60,558 nucleotides of DNA, filler included, from Ranitomeya imitator (GCF_032444005.1; 5 parts of 4 records of this genome joined end to end with filler, not necessarily neighbours in it), one strand, 5' to 3'; positions 11,613 through 23,713 are shown, counted from the first letter of the whole stretch. Program-made: numbers and translations. Notes: generated by a model from the sequence alone, not told the origin.

Positions 11613-14600
11613 GAATGGCCATCTCCCAGGAATCACTCCAGTGTGATCGAAGTTTCTTACGGATTCATTGTTCTATGGTTTCATCTGCAAAGATCAAAAA
11701 GAAAGAAGGGTAATGCTACCACACTGCATGCTTACCATGTATTTAAAGGGGTATTACTATCTTAAAATAGTACCATAGTACTGGGATATGGTTTAATGCT
11801 ACAGCCCAATCCAAGTTTACACCTGCCCTGCTGGTTTGCCTTGTTTTCGCTTGTACCAGTGCTGGATTCACAGCTACACTGCTGTACAAATATCCTCCAT
11901 GCTGCTTTATAGTAAGTGTTTATCACCCCAGAGCTGGATGCAGACATACACAGCTCAGTACTGCTGTATAATGCCCTCCATTCTGCTGCTGCTTCTGAAC
12001 AGTCTCCTATGTCACAGTCTGCTGTGTATGGGAGATTTCATAGCAGCTGGTTTATATACACTAGCTCAGAGACAAATGAAAGTTAAAGACAGAGTCTACA
12101 TAGCGGGAAAAATTGTGAAAAACGCAGCATACATGTCATACAATGGCTAAAGAAAAGGTTACTCATCAGGAACTCGGGACACCTTATTCTTAATAGTCAA
12201 CTGAAACGACAGGTACACCTTCACAGGTTGTGGATGGGCTTTGAAATTTGACAATACATCACAGTATAATAGATATCGAAGGATTGAAAACAGATAAGGG
12301 CTTTGCTGAGTAAAATCCTCATGATCCACCACTTGACCAGAGTAAAAAAAATTATATATATATAAAAAAAAAAAAGCCTGATCCCAACTTTGGTGGTCAA
12401 CAATGTATAATGCAAAGTCCTGGTCTTAGTCTTTGCAGCTACGTAATGGTGTCACTACATTAATACGAAGCAGACGGGGGCATTTGCTAACTGGCTTGTT
12501 TCAATTTTGCACTAAAATTGGCAGCTTTTTTCCCCCTTCTCTCGGCGCTTTCAGAAACGGTTAATAAAGTGGGTGATGTTTGCCTAAAAGACGAAACATT
12601 GGAGCAGCAAAATTATTATTTGTCTGGGACAAGAGAAGCCATATATACGCCAAAATAATGTTGTGGTGTTCCCAGAAAATACCAGTCCCATTACATTTCT
12701 AGGTTACGTTTTCATTTTCGGCGACTCCCTATAGGTGCAAGACCTTTCTATAGACGCACCGTAGATGCATGCACACAAATGTCCACCTGCCGCCAACCTA
12801 TGAGGATCAGTAATCTATGAGGATCAGTCATTACAAAGCATCCGACATGTAGCCAAGTCACAAGGAAACCGGAGTGGAGGACAATTAGTGTAACAATTGG
12901 TGAGACTTACACAAAGCCGAGCTCGGCATAACCCTAATTAATTCTCTACTCCGCTCCTGACATATTAATGAGGGTCAATTTCCAGGCAGCGGATAACCTG
13001 GCACACAATCACCCTCTATCTGAACATAGTGGGATAAAAAGACACTTTAAAAAAAAAAATATTTGTGTGCAATTATATAAAGTGCAAGCTTTACATTGGT
13101 ATTAATAAAAAGATCCCCAGGGTGTCAGCTCAGAAGAGGCTGCAAAAAACGCTGCAGTTTGCTGCTATATATCACTGCAAAGTATGCATATAACACAATC
13201 AATATGGGTCTTCTGTGGGTTAGTAGATGGCAGGGGGTTCACCATGCTCAGGAACATCATTAATAGCTGTTCTGCACATTATGGCAAAACATGAGGTTAA
13301 ATTTTACTGTTGTCACTTTAATAAGCTGCAATCCTTTGTTGGTGACATCTAATATGGTAATTGCATTATCTGGTGACGTTTAATTGTATGACGTTTTTCT
13401 GTAAAGCTGTCAACTGCATTGTGGGAGAAACTAATGCATTTTGGGTAAGAAGGTCCTGCTGAAGCAGCCATTTTGTAAGAAGCAGTCTATCAGAACAGTT
13501 GTACAAAACGGTCTCCTGCATTACCGTATGTTATACCTAGAACTCCATCATCCTTTATTAAATCTGATAAGGGAACTCTGTTCTGTGGTATTGTGTATTC
13601 AGAACTGTTAAATCAGACGGCAATTGTTATTAGGTCGTGTTCACATGTACAAGATCCACCTTGCTGTGTGCCTTCACTGTTAATTGTAAATGTCATGTTA
13701 TAGGATATTCCAAACTCAATCCTTATACCTGTTATTTGTATTCTTGTAGTTTCACCACATACATCTGTTGACCAAACAAACTGAGAACGGTCTGCTTATT
13801 TTATAAGACAGACACTTTAGGCTGTATGTCCGATTGCACACCGTGAGAACGTGAAAACAGTAGCTATGATTGTGCTCAGATCGGGCACGATAAGACATTG
13901 CAAGTAGAAAATATTAATATGTAAAAAGTGTTTCCGTAAATGTCTAGTCACAATGACTAGGAAAAATATAAGATTGATTTTGGAAATCCATTCAATAGCT
14001 AAGCCAGACCCCCGCTATGTCTATGCATCAATAGTTACAAAAGAAGGGGGCTGGCTCATGTTGAAATGAGCCATCAGCCGAGTCCTCCTGGCTACCCGAG
14101 TCAAACCAAAGACTTCAAAAGAGCTGTGGGGAAGAAACAGTACTATCAGCAGTCACAGATCGGCTGCAGCAGTCATTTGCCATCTGACATCAGTACATCT
14201 GGTCATTGGGGGAACATTTCTTGAAGGGACAGAACCATTGCCTATCCACAAGAGATGATAAATGTATGATTGCTGGGGGTCCAGCTGCTGGATGGACCCC
14301 AACTTACATAGAAAGTTGCTGTGTGAACAGAGCACATGCTTACCTTAAGACCCCTGTTCTCATGAACGATTGGCTGTCCCAGCGATCATACATTTATCTG
14401 GTGTCTAGGTGATAGAAGAAAACGGGACAACCCCTTTAATTTAAATAATGTAACAAGTTCTGTCCTATTTCTCCCACATTAAAAACTATTGCTTTTTTTC
14501 ACCTGCACAACCCCTTAAATATGCTTCTCCTAACACCACTTTTTAAGAAAATAAATGGGAGGTGAAGGGAACAAATGAATCAGCAGACGCAGCACTAAAT

Positions 14601-14664: not shown

Positions 14665-14990
14665 ATGCCAGCACCTTTTCCCCAGCACTGTATCGCCCAC
14701 CTGCAGAACTCCTGGCTATTACCCCCAGCACAGTGTCGCCCACCCGCAGAACTCCTGGCTATTCCGCCCCCCCCCCCCCCCCCCCCCAACACAGGATTGC
14801 CCACCTGCAGAACTCGGAGATTTTCCCCCCAGCATCGGATCGCCCACCCGCAGAACTCCTGGCTATTCCCCCCACAGCACAGTGTTGCCCACCCACAGGA
14901 CTCCTGGCTACTCCCCCCCCACAACACAGGATTGCCCACTTGCAGAACTCAGGGGCTATTCTCCCAGCACCAGATCGCCCACACGCAGAA
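14665..14990. repeat. C-rich ~45-50-bp tandem repeat (CAGAACTCCTGGCTATTCCCCC...GCCCAC)
   Basis: About six imperfect units with variable poly-C runs. Confidence 0.8.
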
Positions 14991-15379
14991 CTCAAGGTTA
15001 TAAGTAAACAATTTCTCTGTGAGCTTAGAAGTCTTCGGTTCCTCTGGTGAACAAATCAGTATTATATGAGGGCCCTCCCTGTCCTCGTACACATCCGGCA
15101 GATGAGATATGTGCGCAGGAATCTGATGTGTCACCAGCAAAACGAAAAAGTGAATGAAGAGAGCCAAATATAGTACAGTCATTAAAGGGGCGGCACACAA
15201 AACACCAATCAGAAAAGGAGCAAAACTAGGTAATTTCGGAGAGACCCTAACTTTTTTTTGGTTAGTTTTCTATCCATATCTATGGAAGACCAGTTCATCA
15301 GTCACATGGTCCTGCCGCCAAACAGCTGAGCAACAATGCAGCCTGGCAGGGGATAGAGTGGGGAAAACCCATTACATAT

Positions 15380-15960
15380 CCGGTACTGATCCCGAGTTAC
15401 ATGCTGTATTATACTCCAGAGCTGCACTCACTATTCTGCTGGTGCAGTCACTGTGTACATACATTACTAATCCTGAGTTACCTCCTGTATTATACTCCAG
15501 AGCTGCGCTCACTGTTCTGCTGGTTTGAACTAGAAACAGACAAGATCTAGATCACAAGTTACATCCTGTATTATACCCCAGAGCTGCACTCACTATTCTG
15601 CTGGTGCAGTCACTGTGTACATACATTACTGATCCTGAGTTACATCCTGTATTATACCCCAGAGCTGCACTCACTATTCTGCTGGTGCAGTCACTGTGTA
15701 CATACATTACTGATCCTGAGTTACATCCTGTATTATACCCCAGAGCTGCACTCACTATTTTGCTGGTGCAGTCACTGTGTACATACATTACTGATCCTGA
15801 GTTACATCCTGTATTATACCCCAGAGCTGCACTCACTATTCTGCTGGTGCAGTCACTGTGTACATACATTACATTACTGATCCTGAGTTACATCCAGTAT
15901 TATACCCAAGAGCTGCGCTCACTATTCTGCTGGTTTGAACTAGAAACCGACAAGATCTAG
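15380..15960. repeat. 81-bp tandem repeat (GAGTTACATCCTGTATTATAC...CATACATTACTGATCCT)
   Basis: The 27-aa periodicity in the ORFs at 15604-15960 and 15552-15869 reflects an 81-bp unit. A short shared terminal segment (GGTTTGAACTAGAAAC.GACAAGATCTAGATCACAAGTTACATC) occurs twice. Confidence 0.9.
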
Positions 15961-17567
15961 ATCACAAGTTACATCACCCCCTAGGAAACATTTTTCAGTT
16001 CCATTCATAACTCATTTACGAGTGAAGGAGCGTTGCTGACTGGTTGCAGTAGGCCATTAATTCCTCCCCGCGGTCTCCAGGCCGCCCTGGTGACAATCTG
16101 GTTTCTCGGGCTTTGGACACCGGGACAGTCGCCTCTTGTGTTCCTGACTACGATCTGATAACCGGCTTGGCTTCTGTACTTGCACCGGTATCAGGTGGGC
16201 AGAACAAGCTCAGACATGTGCCACTCTGTAACGTGACCCGGCCAAACACATCAGACCTGAATAAGGCGACACAGTTCTGTCACCACAAAGGTCTATTTAC
16301 AGGGTCTCCAGTTACCACCCTAAAATTCACAACACCCAGCGCAGAGGAACACACCGGGGAACAGAAGAGCAGCTGTGTACGGTGCACAGGACGTCACTCA
16401 TCAGGCTACGTCCTGCTGCATAGCGCTTATTTACTCAGAGGCCCAGCCTTCCAGAGAAAAAAAAAAAAGTGTGGCAGAAAACATTACACTGTTCAGACCT
16501 TAGTTCATGTTCCAGATTTACACCCATAAGTGCTTCAAAGTAAAGACTGCCAGCCAAAAAGCGTGCCCCATGTACGGGCACAGATGCCTAGCCTATGGGT
16601 AACATTGGCATATACAAAGGGGGGACAGCATGGCCCTAGTGATGGCGGCCTATCATATGAGGCAGGAGGGGAGTTCAGCCACACACTGTATAATCAGCCA
16701 ACAGCCTTCCCTCTGGACCCCCCATATTCCGGTACGAGGGGCTCAGCAGGACACGCATGTATTTTCAAATTATAAGAGTAGAATAAAGGCCTCCAAATAC
16801 ATTAGATGGGATCGGCCGGCGGTCTAATGTGTACAGGGCGCTGGACGACCGATGCTCGGGAGAGACGTCTATCGGACAATCTCCTTCCTCACTCTTCTGT
16901 GTCAGATGGCACATGACCGCTGCAGCCGATCAGTGACTGCCGATTGTCTGCCGTGGTTATGGGCTATCCACCTTCAAATACAACAGCGAGATTAGCAGGC
17001 AGTTCGGCAAGCGTGCATTAGGTTTATATGTTTTTCAGACCAACAACGGCCAATATTGGTAAATGGAAGGCATGGACAATCCCTTTAAGAACCATTCTGA
17101 TCTGGTAAGGATCAAGAGGGGGAACTTGTACTGTTCCACCGCGGATCATTGTCTGTCTGCAGGGGGGGGGGAGGGGGGGTCGACAAAAGATGCGATCAGG
17201 CGGCTGAAGAGCGTCCGCTGGTCAAGCACTGGGCGGCGATCGCGAACAAACGCTCCTTTATTAGAGTGAGCCGCTCCTATAACGAGGGTCCGGGCGGCTT
17301 CAGTGCAGACGTAAAAGGTAAATGGAAAAGAACCGAAAGCTTTCTGCATGTTGGAAACGTCGGCTCAGTGGGGTCCGGAGACCTTCAGCCGAGAGCGGCG
17401 CCCAACTGTGCCCGTCTACTGTGAGGGGCTCAGCATCCGGACCCCCAGCCACAAACTTCACACCTGTCCAGGCACAGCGTTCCCCGCTAATATAAAACCA
17501 CCACTTCCTGCATGCTGGGAGTAGTAGTTCTGTGACAAATCCGGGAACACTCAGGCAGAATATTTAA

Positions 17568-17882
17568 GGCTACGTTCACACTAGCGTTCGGCTAGTGTGC
17601 GTCGCGCTAGCGTCGGGCGACGCAGCGGCGACGCACGCGTCATGCGCCCCTATGTTTAACATGGGGGACGCATGCGTTTTTGCTTGTTGCGTTTTCCGAC
17701 ACGTGCGTCTTTTTTGACGCTAGCGTCGGACCAAGAAAACGCAACAAGTTGCATTTTTCTTGCGTCCGATTTTCGTCAAAAAACGACGCACGCGTTGAAA
17801 AACGCAGCGTTTGTGTGCGTTTGCACGCGTTTTTCGGTGCGTTGCCGACGCAGCAGCGCACAACGCTAGTGTGAACGTAGCC
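17568..17882. mobile_element. PIF/Harbinger (Tourist-like) MITE, 315 bp
   Basis: TAA|GGCTACGTTCACACTAGCGTT...AACGCTAGTGTGAACGTAGCC|TAA: 21-bp perfect TIR and 3-bp TAA TSD. Confidence 0.93.
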
Positions 17883-18489
17883 TAAGGGGGTTTCTCCACA
17901 AATGCACAAGTAACTGCACGAGTCCTGCACCCCCCAATAACACCAAGGACTGGGGTCCGGTGTGAACTGCGCACATACAGGACTGGTGGGGACGAGGACC
18001 GGACAGTGACGGACCCCTGCGACGGTCGCACTGATGACGTCATCTGTGAGGGACGAGGCCCCCGATCACCGCCCATGTAGGACCCAGGGAAGATAATAGA
18101 GGCCCAGTCCCGCTGCTTCTAGGTTCACCCCAATATTGCAGCAGAATGGGCGCATCTGACCGACGACATGCTGGGTGTTGTAGTTCTCTGGCCATTCGCT
18201 TGCCAGGATCAGTTATCACACAGGTAGAACTAGAACTCCCAGCATTCCCACACTGACCAAAGAGGGGCAATACACCACAGAACAGCCTGCAGAATAGCAC
18301 CGGCTGTGGTACTACAAGACTCAGCGCGCCCAGACTGTGGCAGGCAGGAAGGAGACGTCAGTCACACGTGGCCAAGACCGGAGCACAAGGTAACAGGCTG
18401 AGGACCCGCCATTATCACCGAGAATGTCCCGCCATTATCACAGGGAGGACCCGCCATTATCACAGCGTCCCCCGCCGGACGACACTCAC

Positions 18490-18612
18490 CCGCTCCACAG
18501 CACAGCGGGCACCGGAGCACAATGTCCGCTCCGCTCCCGGCTCAGCGGCCTCCGCTCTCCTAGCAACCGCGACACTGACTGCTGCTGAGAGAGAGAGGAG
18601 CCGCCGCCAGCA
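18490..18612 (-). other. TTLL4: Probable non-coding first exon of the TTLL4-like gene (start approximate)
   Basis: CpG-rich segment ending in a strong donor GCGG|GTGAGT (18489-18484), directly downstream of a promoter-motif cluster. No ATG seen in the exon. The link to the 11684 exon is inferred. Confidence 0.55.
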
Positions 18613-18659
18613 CATGACGTCACAGGAAGAGGCGGGGCTACCACCAGACGGGGCGGAGC
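18554..18659 (-). promoter_or_regulatory. CpG-island promoter: imperfect RFX X-box, CRE, ETS and two GC boxes
   Basis: GCTCTCCTAGCAAC at 18554-18567, TGACGTCA at 18615-18622, CAGGAAG at 18623-18629, GGCGGGGC at 18631-18638 and GGGGCGGAGC at 18650-18659. Confidence 0.65.
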
Positions 18660-18707
18660 CGAGAGAGCAGCGCGGGAAAAAGGAGACGTTACTGCTGCAG
18701 TAGGAGA

Positions 18708-20018
18708 CACGAGGCTGAAGTTGGTCTCTGAGGGTATGTGTCCACGGTCAGGATTGCATCAGTATTTGGTCAGTATTTTACATCAGTATTTGTAGCCAAA
18801 ACCAGGAGTGGAACAATTAGCGGAAAAGTATAATAGAAACATCTGCACCACTTCTGCATTTATCACCCACTCCTGGTTTTGGCTACAAATACTGATGTAA
18901 AATACTGACCAAATACTGATGCAATCCTGAACGTGGACACATACCCTTATTCGTCAGTTTCTTATTCCGTAATTATTTCTATTCTGTTTTTTGCATGTTT
19001 AACAACTAAAAATAATCATCACAATAATAACATACAATGCAGTGAGGAGCCCTAATGTGAATACGCTTAAAAACGGCTACAAAAATAATAAAACTGGCAC
19101 AAAAATGGGCATCAAAGTGGGCACCAAAGAGCACTGAAGAAAGGGTTAAATGCCTTTGGGCCACTGATCTAACACTGCAGACATATAGAACAGGGCGCCC
19201 CGCATCCAAACCAGTTATCTCCAGCCTGGCCCAAATGGGTTCTGGGCACCAGAACTGGCATCAAAGTGGGCAAACAGCACATTTTCACAGATTTGAATAA
19301 GTAACATGTTTTTAAGGGGTTAAATGCCTTTGGGCCACTGATACGACACTTAAAATTCACAGACAGTGATGCCAGGCTGGAGGGACTTGGGTTTGATGCA
19401 GGGCATCACTGTCTGTGAATTTTAAGTGTCGTATCAGTTGACTAAAGGCATTTAACCCCTTAAAAACATCACTTATTCAAATCTGTGAAAATGTGCTGTT
19501 TGCCCACTTTGATGCCAGTTCTGGTGCCCAGAACCCATTTGGGCCAGGCTGGAGGGACCTGGGTTTGATGCAGGGCATCACTGTCTGTGTATTTCATGTG
19601 TCAGATCAGTGGCCCATAGGCATTTAACCCCTTAAAAACATCAGTTACTTATTAAAATGGCAAGAATTGACTGCCCACTTTGATGCCAGTTCTGGTGCCC
19701 AGAACCCATTTGGGCCAGGCTGGAGATAACTGGTTTGGATGCGGGGCGCCCTGTTCTATATGTCTGCAGTGTTAGATCAGTGGCCCAAAGGCATTTAACC
19801 CTTTCTTCAGTGCTCTTTGGTGCCCACTTTGATGCCCATTTTTGTGCCAGTTTTATTATTTTTGTAGCCGTTTTTAAGTGTATTCACATCATGGCTCCTC
19901 GCTGCATTGTATGTTATTATTGTGATGATTATTTTTAGTTGTTAAACATGCAAAAAACAGAAAAGAAAAAATTGCCGAATAAGAAACTGACGAATAAGAA
20001 ACCAACTTCAGCCTCGTG
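18708..20018. mobile_element. Foldback DNA element with long modular inverted arms, CACGAGG termini and 7-bp TSD (TAGGAGA)
   Basis: The left arm (18708-18731 plus 18947-19373) is the reverse complement of the right arm (19402-20018, which has one extra ~175-bp module). The spacer is only 28 nt. TAGGAGA lies at 18701-18707 and 20019-20025. The ORFs at 19006-19209(-) and 19735-19938(+) translate almost identically. Confidence 0.85.
18732..18946. mobile_element. Harbinger-type MITE (215 bp, ~80-bp TIRs) inserted in the left arm of the foldback element
   Basis: GGGTATGTGTCCACG...CGTGGACACATACCC flanked by TGA/TTA. The right arm of the host shows the empty site with a single TTA. Confidence 0.85.
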
Positions 20019-20019
20019 T

Positions 20020-20935
20020 AGGAGAGACAGAGGGGGAGACAGAAGAAGAGGCAAAGGGGGAGACAGGAAGAAACAGAGGGGGAGACAGAGGAGAAGAGAA
20101 ACTGGGAGACAGGAGAAGAGAAAGGGGGAGACAGGAAGAGCGGTAGACAGAGGAGAAGAGACAAAGGGGGAAAGAGAGGAGAAGAGAAAGGGGGAGACCG
20201 GAGAAGAGACAGAGGAGAAGAGAAAGGGGGAGACAGGAAAACAGGGGGAGACAGAGGAGAAGAGACAGGGGGAGACAGAGGAGAAGAGACAGAGGGGAGA
20301 CGGAGAATAGACAGAGGAGAAGAAACAGGGGGAGACGGAGGAGAAGAGACAGGGGGAGATGGAGGAGAAGAGACAGAGGAGAAGAGACGGGGAGACAGAG
20401 GAGAAGAGACGGGGAGACAGGGGGAGACAGAGGAAAAGAGACGGGGAGACAGAGGAGAAGAGACAAGGGGAGACAGAGGAGAAGAGACAGAGGAGAAGAG
20501 ACAGGGGGAGATGGAGGAGAAGAGACAGAGGAGAAGAGACGGGGAGACAGGAGAAGAGACGGGGAGACAGGGGGAGACAGAGGAAAAGAGACGGGGAGAC
20601 AGAGGAGAAGAGACAAGGGGAGACAGAGGAGAAGAGACAGAGGAGGAGAGACAGAGGAGAAGAGACGGGGAGATGGAGGAGAAGAGACAGAGGGGGAGAC
20701 AGAGGAGAAGAGACAGGGGGAGACGGAGGAGAAGAGACAGATGGGGAGACAGGAGAAGAGACAGATGGGGAGACAGGAGAAGAGACAGAGGAGGAGAGAC
20801 GGGGAAACAGGAAGAGACAAAAGGGGGAGACAGAGGAGAAGAGACAGGAAGAGACAGAGGGGGAGACAGGAGAAGAGGCAAAGGGGGAGAAAGAAGAGAC
20901 AGAGGGGGAGACAGAGGAGAGAAAGGGAGAGACAG
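20020..20935. repeat. Purine-rich low-complexity tandem repeat (GGAGAAGAGACAGAGG / GGGGAGAC variants)
   Basis: About 900 bp almost devoid of T. All long ORFs across it (19889-20992 etc.) are low-complexity artefacts. Confidence 0.95.
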
Positions 20936-20959
20936 GATGAAAAATAACTTGGTGACAAT

Positions 20960-21960
20960 ACATTCCCTATAGTTGGAGGGATGACTATTCATGGCTAGTA
21001 TTCCGCATGAGATAGCTATGAAAGCACTAGAATATTTTCTGAAGGCGTTTAGTCAATATTCAGATGACTTAATTAATTTTCTGTTACAGGTAATTTTTTA
21101 TTTATTAAAACAATATATTTCTGTTTGATGAAACAATATATCTGCAAAAGAAAGGCGTCCCTATGGGAGCGAAATATTCACCTTCTCTTGCAAATATTGC
21201 AATGGCATTTTGGGAGCATGAATTCATATTTTCACGTGATAATCCATATTTGCAACACATGATCTGGTATGGCAGATACATAGACGACACCCTCATACTT
21301 TGGGAGGGGGATGTATCTGTCATACCAAAATTCATAGATTATATCAATAATAATAATTATAACATAAAATTTACATACAAACAAGATAAACATAGTATAG
21401 CATTTTTGGATTTAGAACTTCAGGGTAATAATAATCAAGAAATTAGATCAGAAACCACTCAAGGGAAACACAATTTTGCATGCAAAAAGTAGTCACCCGA
21501 AGCATACAATTAGATCAATTCTCGTATGTGAGCATATAAGATTAAAGAGAAATTGCTCCAACTTGGAAGATATGCATACTGAATTCAATGACTTGCAGAG
21601 AAAAATGACCAGAAGGAAATATCCAATATGGACAATAGAAAGAGCAAAAAATATGGCACTATTGAAGGATAGAGAAACATTAATAAAACCGCAAAAGAAA
21701 CGTAGTAATGTGAACAGAAATGAAAAACCGTATGTGTGTTTGAGATACAGTCCACAATTTAATGAAATAAAAAAGATCATATATAAATGTTTACCAATCT
21801 TGTATGAGGATAATAGTTTGGCTAAAATATTGGATTTTGGAATTAATGTAATATCCAGACGTGCGCCAACTATAGGAAATGTATTGTCACCAAGTTATTT
21901 TTCATCAAAAACAAAAAGTCAAAGCTGGTTAAAATATAAAGGATTTGTAAAATGTGGAGC
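20960..21960 (+). mobile_element. Second Penelope-like element fragment (RT core with YIDD, frameshifted), cut by a Harbinger insertion
   Basis: GVPMGAKYSPSLANI...YGRYIDD, SSHPKHT and RRAPTIGNVLSPS. The frame ends at KGFVKCG, where the Harbinger TIR begins. Confidence 0.85.
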
Positions 21961-21963
21961 TAA

Positions 21964-23713
21964 GGCTACGTTCACATTAGCGTCATGCGACGCAGCGTCG
22001 CTGACGCAACGCACGACGGATCGGAAACGCACGCAAAAACGCACCATTTTTGACGCATGCGTCGAACGGATGCGTCGTAAAATGCAGCGTTTTTTGTGCG
22101 TTTTTGTTGCGTTTTCCCAAAAAACGCAGCGTTTTACGACGCATGCGTTGTCAAACAATGATGTTATCTTTCCACACAATTTAGTGTCTAGACACTAGAT
22201 AACACCACCAATGAATAGAAGAGGGTGGGTCTAGTGTCTAGACACTAGATAATGCCACCAATGGGTAGATGAGGGTGGGTATTAATGTAATAGTGGTATA
22301 TATACCCCGGCATAGATTATTTCCAACCATACAGCATCAAGATGGAGCGTCCCATGGAGAGTATCTACCTCAATATTGAGCTGAAATTAGCACTTGCTAT
22401 TGCTTATGCTATTGCCTGTCATGAACAGAGGAAAAGAGACAAACTACGGAGAAGGAGTCGTCGGCGTTTTTGGCTACACCCTATAGTGGAAGTCCGAGAG
22501 AGTCGTGGAGCCTACCATTGTCTGTTTGGCGAATTAAATGAGAACCAGGAGAAATACTTTGAATACACCAGGATGTCACAAAACAGCTTCCGATATCTGC
22601 TGCGTCTGGTGGAAGGAACCATTTCCAGGCAGGACACGCAGCTCCATAAATCGATTTCCCCCGAGGAACGTCTGCTGGTGACTCTACGGTACGTAATGCA
22701 ATGTGAAGGATTTATATGTTCTTGCCATTTTTTAAAGTAACGTGTTTTGGTTTTGTGGGGTGGGGGATTGTAATTAAGAATGAAAAATTCTTTCATAACA
22801 ATTTAATTAATTACATTTATTTTTTTTTCTTCTTGTCAGTTTCCTTGCTACCGGAGAGACCTTGAGATCACTGCATTTCCAGTTTCGGATTGGAGTCTCC
22901 ACACTGTCTGGTATTATTGCCGACACATGCCGCGCATTGTGGGACAACCTCCGGGAGGAATTTTTACCCATCCCTACAACTGAAATATGGCAGGCCAACG
23001 CCCAAAAATTCGAACAAGTGTGTTCTTTCCCTAACTGTATTGGAGCCGTGGATGGGAAGCACATTAGGATTACCAAGCCTTCCAGAAGTGGATCTCTGTT
23101 TTTTAATTATAAAAAATACTTTTCCACCGTGCTCATGGCAATTGCAGGTGCGGACTGCAGGTTTCTCGCTGTGGACATTGGAGCGTTTGGCCGTGCAAAT
23201 GATTCACGGACATTTAAGGAGTCTGATATGGGCCGAAGATTGTACAATAACAATTTTAATTTCCCCCAGCCACAACCTCTTCCCAACACCGAAGGCCCGG
23301 CCCTGCCATTTGTTGTGGTTGGGGATGAGGCTTTTCAAATGAGTGGCAACCTACTTAAACCGTACTCCAGTCGGGGGTTGGACCGCACCAAAACTATTTT
23401 TAATTATAGACTGTCCAGGGCCAGAAGAACTGTGGAGTGCGCCTTTGGCATCCTGGTCTCCAAATGGCGTATCTTAGCATCCGCTATAAATTTGAAAATT
23501 GAGACAGTGGATGAGGTGGTGAAGGCGTGTGTGGTTCTCCACAATTTTATTATTGATAAAGAGAGAGTCAACGTGGAACTCGATGAACCCATACCAAATC
23601 CATTGCCTGATTATCAAGATCATCCTCTGCGGACAACTGTGGAGATTGCTCATATGAGGGACCAATTTGCTGCATACTTTGTTTCAGATGTTGGCCGTGT
23701 TTCATGGCAAGAT
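21964..23713 (+). mobile_element. PIF/Harbinger transposon, left end through transposase (truncated by gap)
   Basis: TAA|GGCTACGTTCACATTAGCGT left TIR followed by a HARBI1-like transposase gene. Confidence 0.9.
22342..23713 (+). CDS. Harbinger (HARBI1/ALP1-like) DDE transposase, two exons: 22342-22688 and 22840->23713
   Basis: A GT..AG intron at 22689-22839 restores ISPEERLLVTLR|FLATGETLRSL. Motifs GAVDGKH, YKKYFS, VVGDEAF and RARRTVECAFGIL..KW are present. No stops occur in the spliced frame before the gap. Confidence 0.9.

What the first reader, a model, noticed from the sequence alone, without database searches (positions are those of the whole stretch)
18701..20025. Near-perfect foldback element with CAC termini and a 7-bp TSD: a Galileo/P-superfamily-like signature in a frog-like genome
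Seen: TAGGAGA|CACGAGG...CCTCGTG|TAGGAGA. The arms are about 450 and 620 bp, separated by only 28 nt. They are built from internal modules (a ~175-bp unit present once left and twice right), and there is no ORF. An 8-bp reading (GTAGGAGA) is possible if one terminus is shifted by a base. Established: long, internally repetitive TIRs with CAC ends and 7-bp TSDs characterise Drosophila Galileo (P superfamily). Transib (5 bp), CACTA (2-3 bp) and hAT (8 bp) differ. Inference: a non-autonomous vertebrate Galileo-like or otherwise unclassified foldback family. It could form a >400-bp cruciform/hairpin at a gene promoter, and such elements promote inversions.
Basis: partly seen in the sequence, partly recalled or inferred. 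Interest (0 to 1): 0.72.

Follow-up and report, generated by a model that had tools for sequence, protein, structure and literature searches.

The report
Foldback DNA transposon, superfamily unresolved
This is one copy of a very abundant, non-coding "foldback" jumping-gene family that inserted beside a CpG-rich stretch; it is an ordinary kind of repeat, and its proposed kinship to the fly element Galileo (P superfamily) is possible but could not be tested.

Summary
A 1311-bp element (18708-20018) begins CACGAGG and ends CCTCGTG. It is flanked by TAGGAGA on both sides, and that 7-mer occurs nowhere else on the + strand of the piece. Its arms are 448 and 617 nt, 97% alike, separated by a 28-nt loop. 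They are built of 171-172-nt units, with one extra unit on the right.

Public contigs from four coded organisms show that the flank is single-copy while every part of the element is highly repeated. No match runs past 20018. So it is a non-autonomous foldback-type cut-and-paste transposon from a large family shared by related species.

The superfamily stays open. This single copy allows a target duplication of 7 bp (symmetric ends), 8 bp, or formally 5-6 bp. No other copy with flanks, no empty site and no autonomous partner could be reached.
- Transib, CACTA and Dada are excluded.
- P/Galileo-like, hAT and Mutator/foldback all remain possible.
- The "promoter" setting is plausible but unproven.

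Interest is low to moderate.

The parts
18701..18707 (.). Left copy of the flanking direct repeat TAGGAGA (the 8-bp reading GTAGGAGA starts at 18700)
   Evidence: identical to 20019-20025. These are the only two + strand occurrences in the piece.
18708..20018 (.). Whole foldback element, 1311 bp, CACGAGG...CCTCGTG, non-coding
   Evidence: Summed contig depth jumps from about 16 in the flank to 1e4-4e5 inside.
18708..18728 (+). Left terminal inverted repeat (18 nt identical to the right end) with the start of the subterminal region, up to the nested insertion
   Evidence: I11.
18732..18946 (.). Nested 215-bp MITE with an 81-nt inverted repeat of its own, flanked by TGA (18729-18731) and TTA (18947-18949). 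PIF/Harbinger-type TWA duplication with one mismatch. It inserted after the foldback element.
   Evidence: I3. The arm alignment shows the right arm has an uninterrupted TTCTTATTCG at this point. In one search the core 18759-18919 reaches depth 2.5e6, and the ends of relatives read TTA|GGCCACGTTCACACGT.
18947..19139 (+). Left outer arm segment (AT-rich, unique to the family), partner of 19805-19998
   Evidence: I1: 327 nt, 98% complementary..
19140..19373 (-). Left-arm array: one full 172-nt unit and a 60-nt partial unit, in inverted orientation relative to the right arm
   Evidence: I2, I4 and D5.
19374..19401 (.). 28-nt central loop; its sequence matches part of the 172-nt unit as it reads in the right arm
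   Evidence: I4. In one search, unit R1 starts with the loop letters and matches the inside of R2.
19402..19843 (+). Right-arm array: a partial unit and two full 171-172-nt units (19501-19671, 19672-19843). One unit has no partner on the left.
   Evidence: D2 (spacing 172, 171). Joints that 'go back 339' show other copies with more units.
19977..20001 (+). Two subterminal direct repeats GAATAAGAAA, 15 nt apart; candidate transposase-binding sites
   Evidence: positions 19977 and 19992. The function is inferred.
20001..20018 (-). Right terminal inverted repeat
   Evidence: In one search table 8, six contigs that continue beyond their match stop matching at 20009-20018, and none passes 20018.
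20019..20025 (.). Right copy of the flanking direct repeat TAGGAGA; it is also the first letters of the purine-rich minisatellite

Best explanation
**What it is.** The region 18708-20018 is one insertion of a non-autonomous, foldback-type cut-and-paste (TIR) DNA transposon. Its family has on the order of a thousand or more copies and is shared by several related species.

**How it works (inferred).** The element codes for nothing. A transposase supplied in trans would recognise the 18-nt terminal inverted repeats (CACGAGGCTGAAGTTGGT) and probably the subterminal GAATAAGAAA repeats. It would cut the element out and join it into a staggered cut in the target. Repair of that cut duplicated TAGGAGA (7 bp if the ends are symmetric, 8 bp at most).

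**Internal dynamics.** The arms carry arrays of a 171-172-nt unit. The number of units differs between the two arms and between copies, as expected from unequal exchange or slippage. The arms stay 97% alike.

**History of this copy.** After insertion, a PIF/Harbinger-type MITE landed in the left arm.

**Superfamily.** It belongs to the class with long target duplications (P, hAT or Mutator), and this copy alone cannot decide among them.

**Shown versus inferred.**
- Shown: the structure, the flanking duplicate, the repetitiveness, the right-hand family boundary, and the nested insertion.
- Inferred: trans-mobilisation, the binding sites, the mechanism of unit turnover, and the TSD length.
For: - Terminal repeat and flanking duplicate: (I11).
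- Arms 97.1% identical with one 171-nt indel.
- Near-complete hairpin, -652 kcal/mol.
- No coding capacity.
- Family is real: contig depth is about 16 in the flank against 1e4-4e5 in the element, in four organisms from four studies. Matches of other copies end at 20009-20018 while the contigs run on.
- Joints in other copies skip or repeat whole units (339 = 2 x 171).
- The nested MITE interrupts only the left arm, at a point where the right arm is continuous.
- Foldback families with tandem subrepeats in their arms and no transposase are well described: PMC4079207, PMC3573991, PMC5225508.
Against: - Only one copy could be read with its flanks, so the target duplication rests on n = 1.
- That duplicate lies at the edge of a purine-rich minisatellite where AGGAGA is common (38 occurrences in the piece), although the full 7-mer with its T is unique.
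- The left family boundary could not be seen separately, because only 21-24 nt lie between the terminus and the nested MITE.
- Three of the contig matches stop at 20014, four bases short of the end, so the last bases may vary among subfamilies.
- No autonomous partner is known.
Confidence: 0.85

Rival explanations
1. It is a P-superfamily, Galileo-like family. A THAP-domain P-type transposase encoded elsewhere in the genome would mobilise it and make 7-bp (sometimes 8-bp) target duplications.
For: - With symmetric CAC...GTG ends the duplicate is exactly 7 bp. Galileo and 1360 make 7 bp and P makes 8 bp (PMC3698922, PMC4168063).
- Long arms built of tandem units resemble Galileo (PMC3573991, PMC3688188).
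- Known P-type ends start with CA: Pdre2 begins CATACCTG (bioRxiv 10.1101/2024.03.22.586318).
- P-like elements exist in vertebrates (same preprint).
Against: - No transposase link could be made, and n = 1 for the TSD.
- TAGGAGA is not palindromic and does not fit Galileo's GTANTAC consensus (PMC4168063).
- I could not verify a CAC end for Galileo.
- Foldback shape evolves independently and is mostly Mutator-linked (PMC4079207).
- From my own knowledge, P-type families are a small minority of vertebrate DNA transposons.
Confidence: 0.25
2. It is a non-autonomous hAT family member with an 8-bp target duplication GTAGGAGA and slightly asymmetric ends (CACGAGG...CCTCGT).
For: - The longest flanking direct repeat is 8 bp (18700-18707 and 20018-20025).
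- From my own knowledge: hAT is the commonest 8-bp-TSD superfamily in vertebrates, and the T at position 2 fits its loose nTnnnnAn target pattern.
Against: - The 8-bp reading requires dropping the terminal G, which pairs perfectly with the terminal C at the other end.
- The ends CACGA do not fit the hAT YARNG motif (own knowledge).
- Position 7 of the duplicate is G, not A.
Confidence: 0.25
3. It is a Mutator-superfamily foldback element (MULE or FB-like) at the short end of that superfamily's TSD range.
For: - Most foldback elements are assigned to Mutator (PMC4079207).
- MULEs have long TIRs with subterminal tandem repeats and 8-10-bp duplications. Aedes families show 8-9 bp (PMC5225508).
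- Subterminal repeats are present here.
Against: - The duplicate here is at most 8 bp, and 7 bp with symmetric ends.
- The described MULE terminal motif is G-rich (GGGTCTACCC in Muta1, PMC5499845), unlike CACGAGG.
- From my own knowledge, Mutator elements are rare in vertebrates.
Confidence: 0.12
4. It is not a transposon insertion. It is a local palindrome made by inverted duplication (replication fold-back) of resident repeats, and the flanking 7-mer matches by chance.
For: - The right flank is low-complexity and purine-rich, so short matches are easier there.
- The inner units are far more abundant than the outer arms, so the centre could be satellite-like DNA.
Against: - The outer arms and termini are themselves repeated about a thousand-fold relative to the flank in four organisms, and matches stop at the terminus.
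- The 7-mer with its T is unique in 13.6 kb.
- An exact 7-bp match flush with both ends has a chance of about 6e-5.
Confidence: 0.03

Closest known systems
Galileo (Drosophila, P superfamily)
   Same: Long terminal inverted repeats built of tandem subrepeats. Many two-arm copies without a transposase. 7-bp (rarely 8-bp) target duplication. Other elements are often nested inside (PMC4168063, PMC3573991).
   Different: Here there is no transposase link and no sequence similarity was tested. The target is not the palindromic GTANTAC. The host is a vertebrate-type genome rather than a fly. The arms are shorter, at 450-620 nt.
Mutator-type foldback elements (Drosophila FB, Tetris, Aedes Muta1)
   Same: Foldback architecture. 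Arm length varies through tandem subrepeats. Most copies are non-autonomous. The subrepeats can seed satellite DNA (PMC4079207, PMC5225508, PMC5499845).
   Different: Those elements make 8-10-bp duplications, and Muta1 has a G-rich terminal motif. Here the duplication is 7 bp (at most 8) and the ends are CAC.
Vertebrate P-like elements (zebrafish Pdre2 / THAP9)
   Same: A vertebrate host, a CA start of the terminal repeat, and a long target duplication (bioRxiv 10.1101/2024.03.22.586318).
   Different: Pdre2 has 13-bp TIRs with distant 12-bp subterminal repeats, an 8-bp duplication and a coding region. It has no foldback arms.
hAT-derived MITEs
   Same: Non-autonomous, short conserved termini, an 8-bp duplication possible here, and abundant in vertebrates (own knowledge).
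   Different: The terminal motif does not fit YARNG, and symmetric ends give 7 bp rather than 8.

Membership tests
P superfamily / Galileo | Mobilised by a THAP-domain P-type transposase (an autonomous copy with the same ends) | not testable with these tools
   The element is non-coding. Terminus scans gave only chance hits or nothing.
P superfamily / Galileo | Target duplication of 7 bp (Galileo, 1360) or 8 bp (P) | tested here: met
   In this single copy it is 7 bp with symmetric ends and 8 bp at most. With n = 1, readings of 5-6 bp are formally possible if the A...T pair belongs to the element.
P superfamily / Galileo | Palindromic target preference GTANTAC (Galileo) | tested here: not met
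   The site is TAGGAGA, not palindromic. Only the 8-bp reading shares GTAG (against PMC4168063). A single site is a weak test.
P superfamily / Galileo | [quoted passage not shown] | tested here: met
   Arms of 448 and 617 nt with 171-172-nt units. This feature is not specific to P (PMC4079207).
hAT | 8-bp target duplication | tested here: inconclusive
   GTAGGAGA is repeated at 18700-18707 and 20018-20025, but this reading needs asymmetric ends.
hAT | Terminal motif YARNG | tested here: not met
   The ends read CACGA. The motif is taken from my own knowledge, not from a paper read here.
Mutator / Foldback | 8-10-bp target duplication | tested here: inconclusive
   The duplicate is at most 8 bp here. 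The range comes from PMC5225508 and PMC4079207.
Mutator / Foldback | Long TIRs with subterminal or tandem repeats | tested here: met
Transib | 5-bp target duplication flush with CAC...GTG ends | tested here: not met
   The five bases flush with the ends are GGAGA on the left and TAGGA on the right.
CACTA / CMC | 2-4-bp target duplication flush with CAC ends | tested here: not met
   GA vs TA, AGA vs TAG, and GAGA vs TAGG do not match.
Dada | No TIRs; insertion into small RNA genes with a 6-7-bp duplication | tested here: not met
   There is an 18-nt TIR and no RNA family in the piece. The features come from PMC3706591.
PIF/Harbinger MITE (nested element only) | 3-bp TWA target duplication | tested here: met
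   This copy is flanked by TGA/TTA, with one mismatch. The consensus flanks of relatives are TTA...TAA (table 7).

The most novel reading that the evidence does not exclude
The family is a vertebrate counterpart of Galileo: a high-copy foldback family mobilised by a THAP9/P-type transposase that is, or recently was, active in this lineage. That would be the first abundant P-superfamily foldback family described outside insects.
Probability: 0.2. Interest if true: 0.55.

Novelty: new member of a known kind. Interest (0 to 1): 0.3.

Why it matters
As it stands, this is routine repeat annotation: one copy of an abundant foldback MITE-like family with a second MITE nested inside it.

It would matter modestly in two cases:
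- If the family proves to be P-type, it would point to an active or recently active vertebrate P/THAP9 transposase with a large non-autonomous following.
- If this insertion, which abuts a CpG-rich promoter-like stretch, alters the neighbouring gene's expression or local stability.

The 172-nt unit is far more abundant than the outer arms. That makes the family a candidate example of satellite DNA seeded from a transposon.

Tried and rejected
**Search routes to other copies that gave nothing**
- Other copies inside the 13.6-kb piece: none.
- 17-nt terminus in metagenome contigs: 102 hits, all chance, none extending beyond 20-28 nt.
- 21-nt terminus in prokaryotic genome contigs and in viral contigs: zero hits.
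- Codon test of the terminal base. I searched the protein collection for ORFs of other copies that read across the right terminus (19939-20058 on +, 19892-20026 on -). If the boundary codon were always TGN, that would fix the terminal G. No candidates were found, and the collection seems to hold almost nothing from these species (one hit for the 419-aa ORF).
- Full-text search for the terminus sequence: one unrelated bacterial paper.
- Marzo 2008 and Yuan & Wessler 2011 are not held. Galileo's CAC end and the published table of terminal motifs were therefore not checked.
- Rfam: nothing in the piece.

**Readings rejected**
- Transib, CACTA, Dada, piggyBac/Kolobok (TTAA) and Tc1 (TA): the bases flush with the ends do not fit.
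- Two head-to-head insertions: rejected because the outer flanks carry one matching duplicate and the centre lies inside a single repeat unit.

**Empty site.** An empty site in the related organism B could not be read. Its contig matches 18192-18464 and then diverges, and no contig covers 18497-18638.

Full report
**1. What is in the sequence**

The element runs from 18708 to 20018 (1311 bp). It starts CACGAGGCTGAAGTTGGT and ends with the exact reverse complement of those 18 bases (I11). That terminus occurs only at these two places in the window, against 0.03 matches expected by chance.

TAGGAGA lies directly outside both ends (18701-18707 and 20019-20025). On the + strand of the 13.6-kb piece this 7-mer occurs only there. 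The shorter AGGAGA is common (38 occurrences) because the right flank is a purine-rich minisatellite.

**2. Anatomy**

- The left arm is broken by a nested element. In place of the right arm's continuous ...GGTTTCTTATTCGTCAG..., the left arm reads ...GGTCTC-TGA-[215 bp]-TTA-TTCGTCAG....
- With the nested element removed, the arms are 448 and 617 nt. They share 433 of 446 aligned bases (97.1%) and differ by one 171-nt block present only on the right.
- Each arm has three parts, from the outside in:
  - an 18-nt terminus with GAATAAGAAA subterminal repeats (two copies in the right arm; the nested MITE cuts through one on the left);
  - an AT-rich outer segment of about 190 nt;
  - an array of 171-172-nt units.
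- The left arm has one full unit and a 60-nt partial unit. The right arm has a partial unit and two full units (D2, I2 and I4).
- The 28-nt "loop" (19374-19401) matches the part of the unit that precedes the inverted junction, so the centre of the element lies inside a unit.
- As single-stranded DNA the element folds into a nearly complete hairpin at -652 kcal/mol.
- Nothing is encoded. The mirror-image 67-aa ORFs have no Pfam match, and Rfam finds nothing in the piece.

**3. Is it a repeat family?**

Contigs of four public runs from four coded organisms and four studies were laid on 18000-20110 at 85% likeness or more.

- In the run that best holds the locus, the left flank has a flat depth of about 16 and is a single contig.
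- From 18710 onward the summed depth is 1e4 to 4e5 for the foldback element and 2.5e6 for the core of the nested element. It falls to 73 beyond 20058.
- The tool warns that summed depth is not a copy number. I read it only as orders of magnitude: about a thousand-fold for the outer arm and terminus, and more than ten-thousand-fold for the 172-nt unit.
- The three other organisms give the same pattern.
- In table 8, six contigs that continue beyond their match stop matching at 20009, 20013, 20014 (three contigs) or 20018. None runs past 20018. Independent copies therefore place the right family boundary at the proposed terminus to within four bases.
- Joints that skip or repeat multiples of the unit (for example "goes back 339") show that unit number varies between copies.
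- The left boundary could not be seen on its own, because only 21-24 nt separate it from the nested element.

**4. The target duplication**

- The longest direct repeat at the two ends is 8 bp (GTAGGAGA, 18700-18707 and 20018-20025).
- The terminal complementarity can be extended by one base outward (A at 18707, T at 20019).
- One copy therefore allows several readings:
  - 7 bp with symmetric CAC...GTG ends;
  - 8 bp if the right end is ...CCTCGT;
  - 6 or 5 bp if the A and/or T belong to the element.
- The 7-bp reading is the most economical, but it rests on a single copy.
- Bases flush with the CAC ends do not match at lengths 2-5. This rules out CACTA/CMC (2-4 bp) and Transib (5 bp).
- Dada is ruled out because it lacks TIRs and targets small RNA genes (PMC3706591).

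**5. Attempts to reach other copies, an empty site or a partner**

- The terminus scan of metagenome contigs gave 102 chance hits, none extending.
- Scans of prokaryotic genome contigs and viral contigs gave nothing.
- I tried a codon-level test of the terminal base. It looks for ORFs of other copies that read across the terminus, where the boundary codon would be TGN if the final G belongs to the element. The protein collection held no such ORFs.
- In the closest related organism, the orthologous contig stops matching at 18464, so no empty site could be read.

**6. Comparison with known families**

- Galileo and 1360 make 7-bp duplications and P makes 8 bp. Galileo has long arms with tandem repeats that carry THAP-binding sites, and its target consensus is the palindrome GTANTAC (PMC3698922, PMC4168063, PMC3688188, PMC3573991).
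- Zebrafish Pdre2 starts CATACCTG and makes 8 bp (bioRxiv 10.1101/2024.03.22.586318).
- Most foldback elements are assigned to Mutator, with 8-10-bp duplications. The foldback shape is thought to arise independently in different superfamilies (PMC4079207, PMC5225508, PMC5499845).

So the shape says nothing about the superfamily. The 7-bp reading and the CA start lean towards P. The prior abundance of hAT in vertebrates and the possible 8-bp reading lean towards hAT, although CACGA does not fit its terminal motif (both points from my own knowledge). Mutator is possible only at its lower limit.

My odds are P-like 0.25, hAT 0.25, Mutator 0.12, and the rest other or unclassified.

**7. Setting**

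- The stretch 17100-18700 has GC 0.58 and CpG observed/expected 0.94, against 0.33 in the element.
- A CRE (TGACGTCA, 18615-18622) and GC boxes lie within 90 nt of the left end.
- Part of this CpG richness comes from a CpG-rich 315-bp MITE at 17568-17882.
- No transcript data were available, since the single read-laying run went to DNA runs.
- A 419-aa ORF on the minus strand (10377-11636) has one 39%-identical relative. It is probably an exon of an unnamed gene that may start in this CpG-rich stretch.
- "At a promoter" is therefore plausible but not shown. Cruciform formation and inversion promotion are conjecture.

**8. Verdict**

This is a real, well-formed, non-autonomous foldback transposon of an abundant family, carrying a nested Harbinger-type MITE. 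It is ordinary in kind. The P/Galileo reading is a live but unproven minority hypothesis. A genome-wide table of duplications and the identification of the autonomous partner would settle it.

Noticed in passing
window 18732-18946: A nested 215-bp MITE with an 81-nt inverted repeat of its own, flanked by TGA/TTA. Its core (18759-18919) is by far the most abundant sequence on the stretch: summed contig depth about 2.5e6 against 16 for the flank, in all four organisms. Most relatives have different ends, TTA|GGCCACGTTCACACGT...ACGTGTGAACGTGGCC|TAA, so this copy belongs to a subfamily with other termini (GGGTATGTGTCCACGG...).
   Followed up: partly
window 17568-17882: A second MITE, 315 bp and very CpG-rich, with ends GGCTACGTTCACAC.../...GTGTGAACGTAGCC, flanked by TAA on both sides (PIF/Harbinger type). 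It sits inside the CpG-rich stretch and inflates the 'CpG island' signal there (CpG o/e 1.2-1.5).
   Followed up: partly
window 20020-20937: A purine-only minisatellite (12/24-nt period; GC skew 0.71 and AT skew 0.96 over 20128-20627). It begins exactly at the right copy of the target duplication, so the foldback element landed at its edge. It produces long spurious ORFs on both strands.
   Followed up: no
window 22342-23713: PIF/Harbinger transposase ORF (DDE_Tnp_4, E = 1.4e-28) preceded by a 132-aa ORF. It is cut off by the edge of the piece and may be an autonomous or recently autonomous Harbinger copy. No link to the two Harbinger-type MITEs was tested.
   Followed up: no
window 21163-22198: ORFs of 109 and 240 aa with a weak reverse-transcriptase match (RVT_1, E = 0.0014, below the curated cut-off); probably a decayed retroelement.
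   Followed up: no
window 10377-11636 (-): A 419-aa ORF with no Pfam family and a single 39%-identical, 96%-coverage relative (P0001, 435 aa, from a 1.7-kb Logan contig). It is probably a large coding exon of an unnamed gene.
   Followed up: partly
window 14680-14993 and 15384-15934: Tandem arrays of 43-nt units (about 5 copies, C-rich) and 81-nt units (6.7 copies, 88% matches).
   Followed up: no
window 19207-19348 and 19491-19632: The 172-nt unit is 10-30 times more abundant in contig depth than the element's outer arms. It may also exist as longer arrays or as a satellite elsewhere in these genomes.
   Followed up: no
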